DNA of 63,853 nucleotides, the filler included, from Octopus bimaculoides (lineage: Eukaryota), in the NCBI RefSeq assembly GCF_001194135.2. It is 6 parts of 5 records of this genome, joined end to end, with 100 filler letters (N's around TTAATTAATTAA, not from the genome) between each part and the next. Parts side by side here need not be neighbours in the genome. Positions count along the whole stretch, not along the records: positions 1 to 15,313 come from NC_068982.1; 5 more parts are not named here. One strand, 5' to 3'. Of this stretch, positions 3,028 to 15,492 are shown in pieces; position 1 is the first letter of the stretch, and every line of letters starts with the position of its first letter. The position numbers and the translations under genes are program-made. The notes beneath the pieces are model-generated. The model worked only from the letters and a program-made list of their open reading frames with translations. It was not told where the DNA came from and did not search any database.

Positions 3028-3451
3028 ATTTGGGCTGCAGGCCCACTTAGCCCTCCGCAGGATCTAGTTGAAAAGTGCGCACGGAGTGCAGCTTTTAAGC
3101 TAGTATATNNNNNNNNNNNNNNNNNNNNNNNNNNNNNNNNNNNNNNNNNNNNNNNNNNNNNNNNNNNNNNNNNNNNNNNNNNNNNNNNNNNNNNNNNNNN
3201 NNNNNNNNNNNNNNNNNNNNNNNNNNNNNNNNNNNNNNNNNNNNNNNNNNNNNNNNNNNNNNNNNNNNNNNNNNNNNNNNNNNNNNNNNNNNNNNNNNNN
3301 NNNNNNNNNNNNNNNNNNNNNNNNNNNNNNNNNNNNNNNNNNNNNTACTGATATATATTAGAGACATACACAATACTACGGTTAAATTTAAATTAAAAAT
3401 ACTGGAAGAGTTCGTCCATAATATTGAAGGGCTGGAAAATGGAGAATCTAC
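3028..3451 (+). CDS. Candidate coding exon(s) of an unknown gene, split by a gap
   Basis: Acceptor ctctctttag at 3027, then open frame IWAAGPLSPPQDLVEKCARSAAFKLVY up to the gap; after the gap open frame LIYIRDIHNTTVKFKLKILEEFVHNIEGLENGES ending at a GTAAGT donor (3452); no homolog recognised. Confidence 0.2.
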
Positions 3452-4101: not shown

Positions 4102-4410
4102 AACTGGCACTCCACTGGTTACGACTACGAGGGTTCCAGCTGATCCGATCAACGTGAAATTAAAGTGCAAGTGTACTCTTAACGTACAAACACGTGTACT
4201 CTTAACGTAGTTCTCTAGAAAGTTCAGCGTGACACAGGAATGTGACAAGGCTAGCTCTTTGAAATACAGGTACTACTCATTTTTGCCAGCTGAGTGGACT
4301 GGAACAACGTAAAATAAAGTGTCTTGCTCGAGGACACAACGCGTCGCCGGGAATTAAACTCACGACGGTACGACCGTTAGCCGAATACTCTAACCACTAA
4401 GCTATGCGCC
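4102..4410 (-). mobile_element. SINE family V, tail type 1
   Basis: Reverse complement of 3666-3908, with tRNA-like head (A box TAGCTTAGTGG). Confidence 0.85.
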
Positions 4411-5057
4411 TTTACACACACACACATAGTAACTGTGTTGATTGCTTTCTATGTCTGTTATTGGCGCAATAGTGTATGCATATCTATATCCTTTTCTTGT
4501 TGATTGATTTCAAATCAAACTGTGTGATTTGAAGCAGATTTGCATATTATTTCTAACTGATCGGGTGACCATGTAGAGGATTCCCCTGTCGAATTAAGTG
4601 TGTGGCCTCTATCAAAGGCAAACCATCCTGAAAAGACTGTCATTGAACAAGGATGTGATGAAGACTTCTGATTGTGTGTGTGTGTTTTGGTTTGACAGAG
4701 AGTGAAAGATAAAGATAAAGAGAGAGAGAGAGTATTATGAATAGTTGTGAGAGACACGTTAATTATTAATACATGGCATATCGGGTAGAGGTTGGGGTTT
4801 AAACACTTTCACATTTCAATGAAATTATTTCTTAGAAACTTTCTGGCCTTTAGCTAGTTTGCTTTATAAAAAGAAAAAGAAAAAAAGAAACAATCTCCTT
4901 ATGACTAATCTGCTTTATTTCTGTAACCTTACAAAGCATTAGTCAACTTTGCCATGTTTTTTTTGTAAATGGAGGCTTTCTTTATTCATCTGTTTAAAAT
5001 TACGATACAAAACAGCTTATGTTTGCAATGATAACCAGAGGATTGTTAATAATAGTG

Positions 5058-5516: not shown

Positions 5517-5721
5517 AAGCAGTGAGCTGGCAGAATCGTTAGCACACCGAGCAGAATGCTTTTGTTCGTTCATACGTTCTGAGTTCAAATTCCACCAAGG
5601 TCGACTTTGCCTTTCATTCCTTCAGGATCGATAAAATAAGTACCAGTTAGATACTGGGGATCGATATAATCGACTTAGCCCCTCCGCCGATATAACTGAC
5701 CCTGTGCCAATATTTGAAACC
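5517..5721 (+). mobile_element. SINE family M with 16 bp target-site duplication
   Basis: Head GAGCTGGCAGAATCGTTAGC; M domain; flanked by identical AATGTCTTAAAATTAT at 5501-5516 and 5722-5737. Confidence 0.9.
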
Positions 5722-7232: not shown

Positions 7233-7668
7233 GGTTGTTTAACCCCGGTCGACTTTGACTAAACAAATTGCAATTTAAGTAGATTAAAGTCTTACGAGTC
7301 ATAATTATTCCATCTTGTTTTCAGGAATGATGTGGCTAAAACCACATTATTCAACGTCCCTTCCTTCACTTTTATTTAAAATAGCTGGGTTTGACTTGAG
7401 AGAGATTTGGTTACTATTTCTAGCAAATCGAGTGACCACATAGACACCCGCCGGTTAACTCATGTCGATTAATGTTATTTATATGTTGACAAAATACGAT
7501 GGCTATGTGTGTGTGTATGTGTGTGTGTGTGTGTGTGTNNNNNNNNNNNNNNNNNNNNNNNNNNNNNNNNNNNNNNNNNNNNNNNNNNNNNNNNNNNNNN
7601 NNNNNNNNNNNNNNNNNNNNNNNNNNNNNNNNNNNNNNNNNNNNNNNNNNNNNNNNNNNNNNNNNNNN

Positions 7669-7699
<31 letters not shown>

Positions 7700-7744
7700 A
7701 CAGTGTTTTTTCCTTTTTGTTTCTTTTCTCTGTACTTATACATT

Positions 7745-7912
7745 GGCGCAGTCATGGCTATGTAGCAAAGAAATTCGCTTGGCAAACACGTCGATTAAGT
7801 ATAGTGCCACTGCACGGCACCTTGGGCAAGTGCCTTCAACTATAACCCTGACCGACCAATGCCTGGTGAGAAAATTTGATAGAGGGAAATTGTGTGAAAG
7901 TCCATCACATAT
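7745..7912 (+). mobile_element. SINE family C, 5' half
   Basis: GGCGCAGTCATGGCT head; GGCACCTTGGGCAAGTGCCTTC CORE-like domain; runs into (TATG)n. Confidence 0.75.
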
Positions 7913-7923
7913 ATGTATGTATG

Positions 7924-8260
7924 TCATTATTCAGTTTTATTTCAAGAGTCCTTGCCAATAGAGATAGAGCCGGTTTCTAAACTAGATCCAAGACTCCTTC
8001 ATTGGAATGTCAACATCAACGACGGTATTTTTATGTATGTATGTATGTATGTATGTATGTATGTATGTATGTATGTATACGTGCAGCATGCATATACCTG
8101 CATATCTAGACGTGCTCGTATATACTTAAATGATAAACTTCTGGAAAGTTTTACTGATTTTTACTGTTCCAGTGATGGTTTGGATCTGTAGTCTCCGAAT
8201 CAGCTTTCTCCTTTCTGATTTTGAGAAGGCTAATTTCTCAAGATTGGTACTTAGGCAGTG
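7924..8260 (-). mobile_element. R4/Dong-like LINE 3' end, (CATA)n-associated family, copy 1
   Basis: Minus frame ends ..GTVKISKTFQKFII*; 3'UTR ends CTGAATAATGA then (CATA)n; internal (CATA)n at 8031-8078. Confidence 0.8.
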
Positions 8261-8290
8261 TGTGTGCATGTATGTATGTATGTATGTATG

Positions 8291-8630
8291 TCATTGTTCA
8301 GTTTTATTTCAAGATTTCTAGCCAATATCGAAAGAGTCGGTTTCTAACCTAGATTCAGGGGTCATTCATTGAAATCTCAATATCATCAACAGGATATTTT
8401 TGTTTGTATGTATTTGTGCAGATTTGTATGTTTTGCTTTATGTATGTCTTCTCACGCATATAGTTGCATATCTAGACATACTCATATATATTGAAATGAT
8501 AAACTTCTGGAAAGTTTTACAGATTTTCACAGTTCCAGTGATGGGTTGAATCTGTAGTTTTCGAATCAACTTTCTCCTTTCTGGTTTTGAGAAGCCTAAT
8601 TTCTTAAGATTGGTACTTAGGCAGTGTGTG
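8291..8630 (-). mobile_element. R4/Dong-like (CATA)n family, copy 2 (recombinant of copies 1 and 3)
   Basis: Identical to copy 3 over 8291-8611, then identical to the junction of copy 1. Confidence 0.85.
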
Positions 8631-8668
8631 TGCATGTATGTATGTATGTATGTATGTATGTATGTATG

Positions 8669-9136
8669 TCATTGTTCAGTTTTATTTCAAGATTTCTAGC
8701 CAATATCGAAAGAGTCGGTTTCTAACCTAGATTCAGGGGTCATTCATTGAAATCTCAATATCATCAACAGGATATTTTTGTTTGTATGTATTTGTGCAGA
8801 TTTGTATGTTTTGCTTTATGTATGTCTTCTCACGCATATAGTTGCATATCTAGACATACTCATATATATTGAAATGATAAACTTCTGGAAAGTTTTACAG
8901 ATTTTCACAGTTCCAGTGATGGGTTGAATCTGTAGTTTTCGAATCAACTTTCTCCTTTCTGGTTTTGAGAAGCCTAATTTCTTAAGATTAGTATTTAGGC
9001 AATGTTTTACATACCCAGAGGCCCAATAATTACAAGTATACACCTGAACTTATAATCTGGATAGAGTAACTGCAGATTTCTCAATAGTTCAGCGTAGGTA
9101 TTCTCTTTTTCACTGGTCTTCAGGTTTATGCTAACA
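8669..9136 (-). mobile_element. R4/Dong-like (CATA)n family, copy 3 (longest)
   Basis: VSINLKTSEKENTYAELLRNLQLLYPDYKFRCILVIIGPLG / frameshift / YVKHCLNTNLKKLGFSKPERRKLIRKLQIQPITGTVKICKTFQKFII matches the C-terminal part of the RLE domain (K..EK..Y..L..L ... IIG.LG ... LQ...GT..I). Confidence 0.85.
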
Positions 9137-9250
9137 TGTATGTATGTATGTATGTATGTATGTATGTATGTATGTATGTATGTATGAGTACATGTGTGTG
9201 TGTGTGTGCATGTACGTATGTATGTATGTATGCATGCATATGTGAATATA

Positions 9251-9410
9251 GGTGCAGATGTAGCCGTGTGATAAGAAGTTTGCTTCCCAACATGGTCCAA
9301 GATACCACTGCGTGGTACCTTGGACAAGTGTCTTCTACTGTAGACCCGAGCTGACTGATCAAAGCCTTATCAGTGGATTTGGTAAACGGAAACTGAGAGA
9401 AGCCTGTCGG

Positions 9411-9490
<80 letters not shown>

Positions 9491-9720
9491 GTGCACGTGT
9501 ATCTTTGGGTTCGTGTTTGTCCCCTACCACCGCTTGACATCCGGTGTTGGTTTGTTTAGGTCCCCATGACAATAACTGGTTCGGCAAAAGTGGCCGATAG
9601 AATAAATACCAGACATAAAAAATATATAATGGAATCAATCTGTTTGATTAAACTCTTCCAGGCGATGCCCCAACATAGCTGCGATCCCATAACTGAAACA
9701 GGTAAATAATAATAAAAGAA
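9251..9720 (+). mobile_element. SINE family C, full length, with internal (TG)n
   Basis: Head, CORE-like domain, (TG)n at 9412-9485, tail GGTTCGGCAAAAG..ACTGAAACAGGTAAA. Confidence 0.85.
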
Positions 9721-9847: not shown

Positions 9848-10502
9848 GGTTTGGCACAAGGCCAGCAATTTCTGAGGACGGAGTAAGTCGATTAGATCGA
9901 CCCCAGGATTTCACTGGTACCTATTTTATCGATCCTGAAAGGATAAAAGACAAAGTCGACCATGATGGCATTTGAACCCAGATCGTAAAGACGGGCGAAA
10001 GGCCGCTAAGCATTCTGCCCTGTGAGGTAGCGATTCTACCAGCTCGCAGCCTTAATATCAAGAATAATATCCTTTCTAATAAAGGAACCAGGCCTGAAAT
10101 GTTGGTGGGAGGGGACTAACCGATTACATCGATCCCAGTGTTTCACTGGTACTTAATTCATCGACCCGAAAAGGATGAAAAACAAAGTCGACCTCAGTGG
10201 AATTTGAACTCAGAACGTGGAGACAGATGAAATACCGCTAAGAATTTCGTCCAGCGTGCTAACGATTCTTCTTTCTTTGTTGCCCACAAGGGGCTACACA
10301 CAGAGGGCACAAACAAGGACAGACAAAAGGATTAAGTCGACTACATCGACCCCAGTGCATAACTGGTACTTTACTTATCGACCCCGAAAGGATGACAGGC
10401 AAAGTCGACCTCAGCGAAATTTGAACTCAGAACATGGAGTCAGATGAAATACCGATAAGCATCTCAACCAGCGTGCTAACGATTCTGCCAGCTCACCACT
10501 TT
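9848..10502 (-). mobile_element. Three stacked SINE family M copies
   Basis: M domain repeated at about 9920-9960, 10150-10200 and 10370-10415, each with a different 3' tail. Confidence 0.9.
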
Positions 10503-11143
10503 AATATCGAGAATAATTTCAAGAATAATATATGCAACAAGACCCTCATTTTCAAAGACCTTACTGCGCTTAAATACCTGCAAATTATCAATTCCGATTC
10601 AGTAATTCTGCACATGCTTTATTACAATAGTATAATACTGATTCAATCTTGGTATTTTAAGTTGATCAAATATTCGAAATACTTCCCAGATCCAATCCAA
10701 TTTTAATTAAAGGAATTACAATAATCAACTTGACTGGCAACGGTAAATGGACTGACTTCATTCATACTAATTAATGGATTTGCTACTCTATTTCCCTATT
10801 TTGATGTATTAAACTTGTCATATACAATAAATGGCCCTAATTACTATCTTTCTCGTAAATGAGATTGGTTGAAACCAATCAGATCATTAATGATCTATTA
10901 TAGACACCATAATGATAACTATTCCTATTAAATCAACTTGGGTTTTTTTGTTTTTTTAAACAAGAAACATTTTAGTGAGCACATTTTCTACATATGACGC
11001 TATTGTACAAATCAATAGTCGCCTTTTCAACGTTAGACCACAAAAATAAATCTATACTACTAAAATAACATAATGTGTCTGTTACACATTAACATTGACC
11101 TCTAATAAATAATAACTTGAACTAAATTCACCCCTGTGTATGC

Positions 11144-14958: not shown

Positions 14959-15297
14959 GAGACCCCCTTCGGTCATAACTGACCATGGGATTGCACTAGA
15001 AAGTTACCCTCTCAGGCACAAGTCCGGGCAAGGTTGTTATGGATGACCGGCAGTCGACCATGCATACCGGCCACCTCTCTCCACATCACCAGTGTTATCG
15101 TGTTATCCAAGGGAAAGGCAAATGCCGATACAGCTTAGCACCTGTGAGGTCGCAACTCATTTCTACAGCTGAATGAACTGGAGCAACGTGAAATAAAGTG
15201 GTCTTGCTCACTCAAGAACACAACACGCAGCCCGATCCGAGATTCGAACTCACAACCTCACGATCGTAAGCTCGACGCTCTAACCACTGATCCAGCG
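14959..15297 (-). mobile_element. SINE family V with tail type 2
   Basis: tRNA-like head with GAGTTCGAATC, V domain, distinct tail ending ATGACCGAAGGGGGTCTC. Confidence 0.85.
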
Positions 15298-15492
15298 TGT
15301 GTATATGTATATGNNNNNNNNNNNNNNNNNNNNNNNNNNNNNNNNNNNNNNNNNNNNTTAATTAATTAANNNNNNNNNNNNNNNNNNNNNNNNNNNNNNN
15401 NNNNNNNNNNNNNATATATATATATATATATATACATATGCATATATATGTAAACATACACACACAAACTCACAGTTATAACAAGCATTGTG

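What the first reader, a model, noticed from the sequence alone, without database searches (positions are those of the whole stretch)
7914..9185. Candidate (CATA)n-specific R4/Dong-like retrotransposon (five copies in 18 kb)
Seen: copies at 7924, 8291, 8669 (minus) and 16345, 25030 (plus) share one 3' end (CTGAAYAATRA) followed by CATA-type repeats. Four different 5' truncation points also abut (CATA)n, copy 1 via a short CA spacer. The sense strand is always the CATA strand, although (CA)n and (TA)n tracts are far more common here. The peptide is the C-terminal part of an RLE domain. Established: R4/Dong target rDNA or TAA repeats; other sequence-specific LINEs target TC, TTC or AC repeats. 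I do not recall a described tetranucleotide CATA-targeting R4 family (inference; needs a literature and Repbase check).
Basis: partly seen in the sequence, partly recalled or inferred. Interest (0 to 1): 0.8.

Follow-up and report, generated by a model that had tools for sequence, protein, structure and literature searches.

The report
CATA-repeat-targeting LINE fragments in octopus DNA
The region holds three dead 3'-end fragments of a jumping gene (a LINE with a restriction-like nuclease) whose relatives in several genomes consistently sit inside (CATA)n repeats.

Summary
The sequence is as described in outline. On the minus strand, three fragments end in CTGAAYAATGA followed by (CATA)n, and they encode the last ~89 residues of a restriction-like-endonuclease (RLE) LINE protein.

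They are not three independent insertions. TRF finds one 378-bp tandem repeat (7912-9005). Copies 1 and 2 share the same 5' junction. Copy 2 is a recombinant with copy 1's junction and copy 3's body (99% identical). The (CATA)11 at 8032-8075 lies inside copy 1's 3' UTR. The piece therefore holds at most two insertions and two distinct 5' ends.

Targeting of (CATA)n is nevertheless well supported from outside the window:
- An independent Octopus vulgaris copy abuts (CATA)3 at its 5' end.
- 5'-truncated relatives in other assemblies have (CATA)n on both sides.
- One locus carries three very different elements head to tail, separated only by (CATA)n.
- Sister families are flanked by (CTTA)n or (AC)n.

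Full-length relatives (~1164 aa) have RT, a CCHC knuckle and RLE, with no APE domain and no N-terminal zinc finger. This fits R4/Dong, but the RT phylogeny could not be run.

Microsatellite-specific RLE LINEs are a known kind, and I found no paper describing CATA specificity in them. Verdict: a new variant of a known kind, of moderate interest.

The parts
9139..9186 (-). (CATA)12 abutting the 5' end of copy 3. It is part of a compound microsatellite, (CATA)4..(CA)n..(CATA)12, that runs to about 9236.
   Evidence: Regex and TRF; sequence read.
8669..9137 (-). Copy 3, the longest fragment (469 bp). It covers residues about 1076-1164 of the LINE ORF (the end of the RLE domain) plus a ~200-nt 3' UTR ending in CTGAACAATGA. 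A 1-bp deletion near 9013 shifts the frame. The original stop codon (8872-8870) has mutated to TCA. An internal degenerate CATA-like tract lies at 8825-8779.
   Evidence: tblastn against the full-length relative P0209; alignment with the O. vulgaris copy; coordinates; peptide homologs.
8637..8668 (-). (CATA)8, which is both the 3' tail of copy 3 and the 5' flank of copy 2.
8291..8629 (-). Copy 2 (~338 bp). Its 5' junction and first ~20 nt match copy 1. The remaining ~317 nt are essentially identical to copy 3 (99% overall). It is a recombinant (unequal crossover or gene conversion), not a separate insertion.
   Evidence: Alignments; blastn identities; TRF period 378.
8271..8290 (-). (CATA)5, which is both the tail of copy 2 and the 5' flank of copy 1.
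7924..8263 (-). Copy 1 (~340 bp), 81% identical to copy 3 overall, with the TAA stop retained at 8128-8126. Its internal 3'-UTR CATA-like tract has expanded to a perfect (CATA)11 at 8032-8075. It ends in CTGAATAATGA.
7912..7923 (-). (CATA)3 tail of copy 1. It is continuous with the TG/TA-type microsatellite that follows the plus-strand SINE at 7740-7905.
   Evidence: SINE ends compared.
7740..7905 (+). Context only: a copy of an octopus SINE-like repeat whose trailing microsatellite adjoins the 3' end of the LINE array. A second copy lies at about 9255-9560.
   Evidence: blastn against the window and the O. vulgaris locus L001.

Best explanation
The region is a small head-to-tail cluster of dead, 5'-truncated 3' ends of a non-LTR retrotransposon. 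The element encodes a reverse transcriptase followed by a CCHC knuckle and a restriction-like (PD-(D/E)xK) endonuclease.

This lineage inserts, in one orientation, into (CATA)n microsatellites. The inferred mechanism has four steps:
1. The element's protein nicks the (TATG)n strand.
2. The nicked end pairs with the (CAUA)n tail of the element's RNA and primes reverse transcription (target-primed reverse transcription).
3. Copying usually stops early, which gives 5'-truncated copies.
4. The cDNA is joined back into the same repeat, so the insert has (CATA)n on both sides.

Each insertion brings a fresh (CATA)n tail, so later copies land in the tails of earlier ones and build arrays.

In this window, two old insertions (copy 3 and copy 1) lay in tandem in a compound (CATA)n/(CA)n microsatellite next to a SINE. 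An unequal crossover or conversion between them then produced copy 2, which gives the 378-bp periodicity.

Shown: the anatomy, the homology, the recombinant nature of copy 2, and the flanking repeats in the window and in related loci. Inferred: the nicking strand, priming by tail pairing, which protein part reads the repeat, and the order of events.
For: Anatomy and tandem structure.

Protein identity:
- The window peptide hits an O. vulgaris protein (85% identity) and P0001 (64%), which carries RPD..E..EK.
- An alignment of 21 relatives shows the CCHC knuckle and the conserved PD / E / EK motifs.
- Full-length relatives of 1164-1221 aa have a central RVT_1, then CCHC, then RPD, with no APE domain and no C2H2 finger.
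- Their RT matches solved R2 proteins at E = 3e-28.

Targeting (all tracts are on the sense strand):
- L001 (O. vulgaris) is an independent copy with a different truncation point, and its 5' end abuts (CCAT)n(CATA)3.
- L007 covers aa 266-1164 and lies between (CATA)~99 and (CATA)~64.
- L008 covers aa 923-1163 and lies between (CATA)~66 and (CATA)~56.
- L012 carries three elements with no meaningful nucleotide similarity to each other (~40-60% at protein level). They sit head to tail and are separated only by (CATA)20 and (CATA)31. The outer flanks are (CATA)6 and (CATA)9.
- Sister families are flanked on both sides by (CTTA)n (L003 full length; L011 in an array) or by (AC)n (L013).

Background: in ~35 kb of octopus sequence (window plus L001), only one (CATA)>=3 tract is not attached to a copy.
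Against: - Only three independent octopus-family junction sets could be examined (window copy 3, window copy 1, L001). Copy 1's 5' repeat is simply copy 3's tail.
- The L001 copy has almost no 3' tail (CTGAATAATGA then CTGACATATATA).
- The related copy in L009/L010 has (CATA)50 at its 3' end but no recognisable microsatellite at its 5' end. The old Argonauta copy (L004) shows no clear flanking repeat.
- No empty site, no active octopus copy and no biochemistry are available.
- The hosts of the ENA contigs are unknown.
Confidence: 0.8

Rival explanations
1. Tail only. (CATA)n is merely the 3' tail that this LINE's reverse transcriptase makes, as many LINEs end in a short repeat. Insertion is not targeted, and the local array arose purely by tandem duplication of one insertion plus its tail.
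For: TRF sees one 378-bp tandem repeat. Copies 1 and 2 share a junction, and copy 2 is clearly a recombination product. L009/L010 lack a 5' microsatellite.
Against: Different 5' truncation points abut (CATA)n in window copy 3, L001, L007 and L008. L012 has three elements with essentially no nucleotide similarity to one another in tandem within one (CATA)n locus, and duplication cannot produce that. Copies 1 and 3 are as divergent from each other (81%) as either is from the unlinked O. vulgaris copy.
Confidence: 0.08
2. Same behaviour, different clade. The element is a microsatellite-specific member of HERO (or another RLE clade such as NeSL), not of R4/Dong.
For: Some HERO families are reported to be microsatellite-specific, and Togen (NeSL-related) targets (TG)n (PMC4640811). 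Hero-type elements are annotated in cephalopods (PMC13282606; PMC10294476). No reference sequences were available for an RT tree.
Against: Dong-R4 is by far the commonest RLE LINE type annotated in octopus: 1129 recently active insertions against 13 Hero and 1 R2. The architecture without N-terminal zinc fingers matches the published description of R4/Dong (PMC7998251).
Confidence: 0.25
3. Preference without protein specificity. The endonuclease is not sequence-specific, and the association arises only because the RNA's (CAUA)n tail must pair with the nicked DNA. Insertions then succeed mainly where (TATG)n is present.
For: Every copy carries the same repeat in its tail as in its target. Sister families differ in tail and target together: (CTTA)n and (AC)n.
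Against: No tool here can separate this from protein-directed nicking. In R2, the best-studied relative, the protein binds the target DNA (established knowledge).
Confidence: 0.2
4. The 378-bp repeat is an ordinary satellite or segmental duplication with no transposon content.
For: Tandem periodicity.
Against: The unit encodes the conserved C-terminus of an RLE LINE protein. Homologs include full-length RT-RLE ORFs and an unlinked copy in O. vulgaris.
Confidence: 0.02

Closest known systems
Dong (Bombyx mori) and Dong-like elements of the R4 clade
   Same: A single ORF of about 1100-1200 aa with RT followed by a CCHC knuckle and a restriction-like endonuclease. There is no APE domain and no N-terminal zinc finger. 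Insertion is into a microsatellite away from genes, and the type is present in molluscs (PMC3812793; PMC7998251).
   Different: [quoted passage not shown] Here the flanks are (CATA)n, with sister families at (CTTA)n and (AC)n. Clade membership by RT phylogeny was not tested.
Waldo (WaldoAg1/2, WaldoFs1), R1 clade
   Same: It targets ACAY microsatellites, and ACAT repeats are the same sequence as (CATA)n (PMC3812793).
   Different: Waldo uses an N-terminal APE-type endonuclease, belongs to a different LINE group and is found in insects. The resemblance lies in the target only and is convergent.
Togen (NeSL-related) and microsatellite-specific HERO families
   Same: These are RLE-encoding LINEs that insert into microsatellites; Togen inserts into (TG)n (PMC4640811).
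   Different: The repeat units and clades differ. The relationship to the present lineage was not tested.
R2 (28S rDNA-specific)
   Same: The RT is clearly homologous (E = 3e-28 to solved R2 proteins). The CCHC motif aligns and the RLE sits at the C-terminus, so the TPRT mechanism is presumably shared.
   Different: R2 targets a single site in 28S rDNA and has N-terminal zinc-finger/Myb domains. No C2H2 finger is present here.
Kibi (TC)n and Koshi (TTC)n, Tx1 group
   Same: Microsatellite-specific LINEs.
   Different: They are APE-type elements of fish and target different repeat units.

Membership tests
RLE-encoding non-LTR retrotransposons (R2 group in the broad sense) | Reverse transcriptase domain of LINE type | tested here: met
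   Not present in the window itself, which holds fragments only. Full-length relatives that share the window's C-terminal peptide have RVT_1 (E 1e-22 to 1e-26) and match R2 structures at E = 3e-28.
RLE-encoding non-LTR retrotransposons (R2 group in the broad sense) | C-terminal CCHC knuckle followed by a PD-(D/E)xK restriction-like endonuclease, with no APE domain | tested here: met
   CRLCx7Hx4C, (R/K)PD, a conserved E and EK are seen in the alignment of 21 relatives and in P0209, P0223 and P0235. Pfam gives no Exo_endo_phos hit. The window retains only the part from the EK motif onward.
RLE-encoding non-LTR retrotransposons (R2 group in the broad sense) | 5'-truncated copies sharing a common 3' end (the signature of target-primed reverse transcription) | tested here: met
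   Copies start at aa 1, 16, 202, 266, 388, 923, 1076, 1084 and about 1120 of the ORF, and all run to the 3' end.
R4/Dong clade | Placement within the R4 clade in an RT-domain phylogeny | not testable with these tools
   No reference R4, Dong, Rex6, HERO or NeSL sequences are reachable. Homologs returned carry no names.
R4/Dong clade | Insertion into rDNA or a microsatellite | tested here: met
   Microsatellites flank both sides in the window, L003, L007, L008, L011, L012 and L013.
R4/Dong clade | (TAA)n as the microsatellite target (typical of Dong) | tested here: not met
   The flanks are (CATA)n, (CTTA)n or (AC)n. No (TAA)n flank was seen.
R4/Dong clade | N-terminus without zinc fingers but with a divergent Myb/SANT-like domain (PMC7998251) | tested here: inconclusive
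   No C2H2 pattern was found in P0209, P0223 or P0235. Pfam finds no Myb in the N-terminal 100 aa even at E <= 10. Profile-profile or structure comparison of the N-terminus was not possible with the allowed inputs.
Waldo / R1 clade (ACAY-specific) | N-terminal APE-type endonuclease | tested here: not met
   No APE domain, and an RLE sits at the C-terminus.

The most novel reading that the evidence does not exclude
These fragments may belong to a widespread, so far undescribed lineage of Dong-like RLE retrotransposons of marine invertebrates. Its families would have switched repeatedly between short-repeat targets: (CATA)n, (CTTA)n and (AC)n. That would give a natural series for working out how an RLE LINE reads a 4-bp repeat unit in one orientation. 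It would also show the elements seeding and expanding long microsatellites (up to ~100 units) and building mixed-family tandem arrays.
Probability: 0.35. Interest if true: 0.55.

Novelty: new variant of a known kind. Interest (0 to 1): 0.4.

Why it matters
Site-specific RLE retrotransposons, chiefly R2, are now being engineered for gene insertion, so natural examples with other specificities are useful comparison material. A lineage whose sister families differ in a simple, asymmetric 2-4-bp repeat target would allow direct tests of what sets specificity: the N-terminal domain, the nuclease, or pairing with the RNA tail.

For octopus genomics, the finding explains why (CATA)n tracts co-occur with Dong-R4-type fragments. 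It also shows how such elements create microsatellites and short tandem arrays, which assemblers and repeat annotators may misread as satellites.

It is an incremental finding. Microsatellite-specific LINEs have been known since Dong (1993), and ACAY-targeting since Waldo (2003).

Tried and rejected
- One metagenome scan for the 3'-end motif TTGAAATAAAACTGAAYAATGA returned only two chance matches in bacterial-looking contigs (L005, L006).
- The protein search with the window peptide gave only two hits, so a genome-wide census of the octopus family was impossible.
- The search with the RT of a relative gave 415 hits, none with a source name. Cluster look-up gave no accessions, so clade naming by annotation failed.
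- The literature was searched for R4 clade + microsatellite, Waldo/ACAY, ACAT/CATA/TACA/ATAC + non-LTR, Dong + TAA, and target-specific + HERO/NeSL. No paper describing a CATA-specific R4/Dong family was found.
- Kojima & Fujiwara 2004 and Novick et al. 2009 are not held.
- A Pfam scan of N-terminal segments for a Myb domain found nothing.
- Rfam and tRNA scans of the window found nothing.
I rejected this because all independent copies, including the unlinked O. vulgaris one, carry it in the same arrangement and with comparable divergence.
- The Argonauta copy (L004) was too decayed to read its junctions.

Full report
**What is in the window.** The piece is metazoan DNA rich in (TG)n tracts, with three assembly gaps. 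The closest named protein hit is from Octopus vulgaris.

Between 7912 and 9186, read on the minus strand, the order is:
- (CATA)12
- copy 3 (9137-8669, 469 bp)
- (CATA)8
- copy 2 (about 8629-8291)
- (CATA)5
- copy 1 (about 8263-7924)
- (CATA)3

A SINE-like repeat on the plus strand follows at 7740-7905. All three copies end in CTGAA(C/T)AATGA immediately before the repeat. All six (CATA)>=3 tracts of the 15.3-kb piece lie at this locus, on the element's sense strand.

- TRF reports a single tandem repeat of period 378 and 3.0 copies over 7912-9005.
- Copies 1 and 2 have an identical 5' junction, (CATA)n-CATGCAC-ACACACTGCCTAAGTACC.
The unlinked O. vulgaris copy reads ...TAACACACTGCCTAAATACC at that point.
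- Copy 2 matches copy 1 at the junction and at the three diagnostic positions within the first ~20 nt. It is then essentially identical to copy 3 for the remaining ~317 nt (99% overall).
- Copy 1 is only 81% identical to copy 3.

The simplest history is two old insertions in tandem (copy 3, then copy 1), followed by an unequal crossover or conversion between them that created the hybrid copy 2. This is an inference from the mosaic pattern.

The perfect (CATA)11 at 8032-8075 is not a flank. It is an expansion of a degenerate CATA-like tract that all copies carry inside the 3' UTR (8825-8779 in copy 3), and homology continues on both sides of it. The piece therefore holds at most two independent insertions and two distinct 5' ends, not three or four.

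**What the copies are.** Copy 3 translates, across a 1-bp deletion near 9013, to VSINLKTSEKENTYAELLRNLQLLYPDYKFRCILVIIGPLG / YVKHCLNTNLKKLGFSKPERRKLIRKLQIQPITGTVKICKTFQKF.

This peptide matches an O. vulgaris predicted protein at 85% identity. It also matches a 134-aa ORF (P0001) that extends upstream through RPDIV...VEVSCPADVN...EKEN. A search with P0001 found 80 relatives. Their alignment shows a CCHC knuckle (CRLCx7Hx4C), then RHD, (R/K)PD, a conserved E, and EK. That is the signature of a restriction-like endonuclease of R2-type LINEs.

Contigs carrying these ORFs have RVT_1 ORFs directly upstream. Cluster members include intact ORFs of 1164-1221 aa, built as follows:
- an N-terminal region without C2H2 fingers
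- RVT_1 at about 457-721
- CCHC at about 969
- RPD at about 1053
- no APE domain

The RT matches solved R2 proteins at E = 3e-28, and the CCHC region aligns with R2's. Against the 1164-aa relative P0209, window copy 3 covers aa 1076-1162, and copies 1 and 2 cover about 1120-1162. The window thus holds only dead terminal fragments: the last ~89 codons plus a ~200-nt 3' UTR.

**Is (CATA)n a target or only a tail?** The window alone cannot decide this. Copy 1's 5' repeat is copy 3's tail, and copy 2 is a recombinant. Related loci do decide it.

1. L001 (O. vulgaris chromosome) has an unlinked copy 82% identical to copy 3. It starts 20 nt further in than copy 3, and its 5' end abuts (CCAT)n(CATA)3. 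Its 3' tail is nearly gone.
2. L007 is a copy beginning at aa 266. It lies between about 99 and about 64 units of (CATA)n.
3. L008 is a copy beginning at aa 923. It lies between about 66 and about 56 units.
4. L012 is the strongest case. Three elements (aa 202-1162, full length, and aa 16-1163) sit head to tail, separated only by (CATA)20 and (CATA)31, with (CATA)6 and (CATA)9 outside. The three share no meaningful nucleotide similarity and only about 40-60% protein similarity. They are independent insertions of different families into one (CATA)n locus, and duplication cannot explain them.
5. In every case the repeat reads CATA on the element's sense strand.
6. Sister families show the same pattern with other units. 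A full-length element and an array lie between (CTTA)n tracts (L003, L011), and a copy lies between (AC)n tracts (L013).

Background (CATA)n is rare. Only one unattached tract of three units occurs in about 35 kb of octopus sequence.

The exceptions are L009/L010, which have a (CATA)50 tail but no recognisable 5' repeat, and a decayed Argonauta copy.

**Mechanism.** What is shown is orientation-specific residence inside (CATA)n, a common 3' end with variable 5' truncation, and head-to-tail arrays.

By analogy with R2 and other LINEs (established knowledge), I infer the following. The protein nicks the (TATG)n strand. The nicked end pairs with the (CAUA)n RNA tail and primes cDNA synthesis. Incomplete copying gives the truncations, and the new tail becomes a fresh target.

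Whether the protein itself reads the repeat, or whether tail pairing alone biases successful insertion, cannot be told here.

In the window, the 3' end of the array is continuous with the TG/TA-type microsatellite that follows a plus-strand SINE. Such SINE-borne repeats may have supplied the original target; this too is an inference.

**Comparison with what is known.**
- Microsatellite-specific LINEs are well established: Dong at (TAA)n in Bombyx, Anopheles and the snail Biomphalaria; Waldo at ACAY; Mino at AC; Kibi at TC; Koshi at TTC (PMC3812793).
- Togen targets (TG)n, and some HERO families are also microsatellite-specific (PMC4640811).
[quoted passage not shown] They lack N-terminal zinc fingers (PMC7998251).
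- Dong-R4 LINEs are abundant and recently active in octopus, with 5 families and 1129 young insertions (PMC13282606).
- Among molluscs, R4-Dong and R2-Hero types are found almost exclusively in cephalopods (PMC10294476).

Neither octopus paper mentions a target. The present lineage works like Dong and has Dong's architecture, but its repeat unit differs. ACAT repeats have been reported as a target only for the unrelated, APE-bearing Waldo.

Membership of the R4 clade rests on RT phylogeny, which I could not run, so HERO remains a live alternative. I found no paper describing a (CATA)n-specific RLE LINE.

**Verdict.**
The copies, the shared 3' end, the CATA flanks and the RLE peptide are real. 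The count of independent copies and of truncation points is not.
(CATA)n targeting by an RLE LINE is well supported by comparative evidence, while the R4/Dong assignment is plausible but untested.
- This is a new variant of a known kind and of moderate interest (0.4). It would fall to 'already known' if Repbase already lists the family with this target.

Noticed in passing
window 7740-7905 and 9255-9560 (+ strand): Two copies of an octopus SINE-like repeat bracket the LINE array. The second carries an internal (TG)41 followed by a conserved 3' part (GTTTGTCCCC...). Seven further copies in the 20-kb O. vulgaris locus L001 have variable TG/TA/TATC-type repeats at the same point. Rfam and ARAGORN find no tRNA-like head.
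   Followed up: partly
window 7539-7668 (also 1584-1997 and 3109-3345): These are assembly gaps (runs of N). The one at 7539-7668 sits inside a (TG)n tract, so the true repeat length there is unknown.
   Followed up: no
window 5518-5720, 9850-10530, 4274-4411 and 15155-15298: Other interspersed repeats share 71-85% identity with several places in the O. vulgaris locus L001 (for example window 10266-10497 against L001 17729-17960, 85%). Their families were not identified.
   Followed up: no
window 8032-8075 versus 8825-8779: The family's 3' UTR carries an internal degenerate CATA-like tract about 110 nt before the true 3' end. In copy 1 it has expanded to a perfect (CATA)11. It may be the relic of an older tail followed by an acquired 110-nt terminal module.
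   Followed up: partly
L012 671-12784: Three very divergent RLE LINEs of this lineage sit head to tail in one (CATA)n locus. The middle one is full length, with a ~540-nt 5' UTR that starts directly after the repeat.
   Followed up: yes
L011 4387-10898 and L003 4824-9447: A sister family is flanked by (CTTA)n and also forms arrays. In L011, an (AACG)60 tract is embedded between two (ACTT)n tracts.
   Followed up: partly
L013 1-3006 (NCBI GCA_024712025.1): A relative with 41% protein identity is flanked by (AC)n-rich repeats on both sides, which suggests a third target type in the lineage. The host organism was not identified.
   Followed up: partly
L001 10068-10148: The 5' flank of the O. vulgaris copy is mainly (CCAT)20, changing to (CATA)3 only at the junction. 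The annotated 'hypothetical protein' P0002 is a translation of this microsatellite plus the LINE fragment, so it is a gene-prediction artefact.
   Followed up: partly
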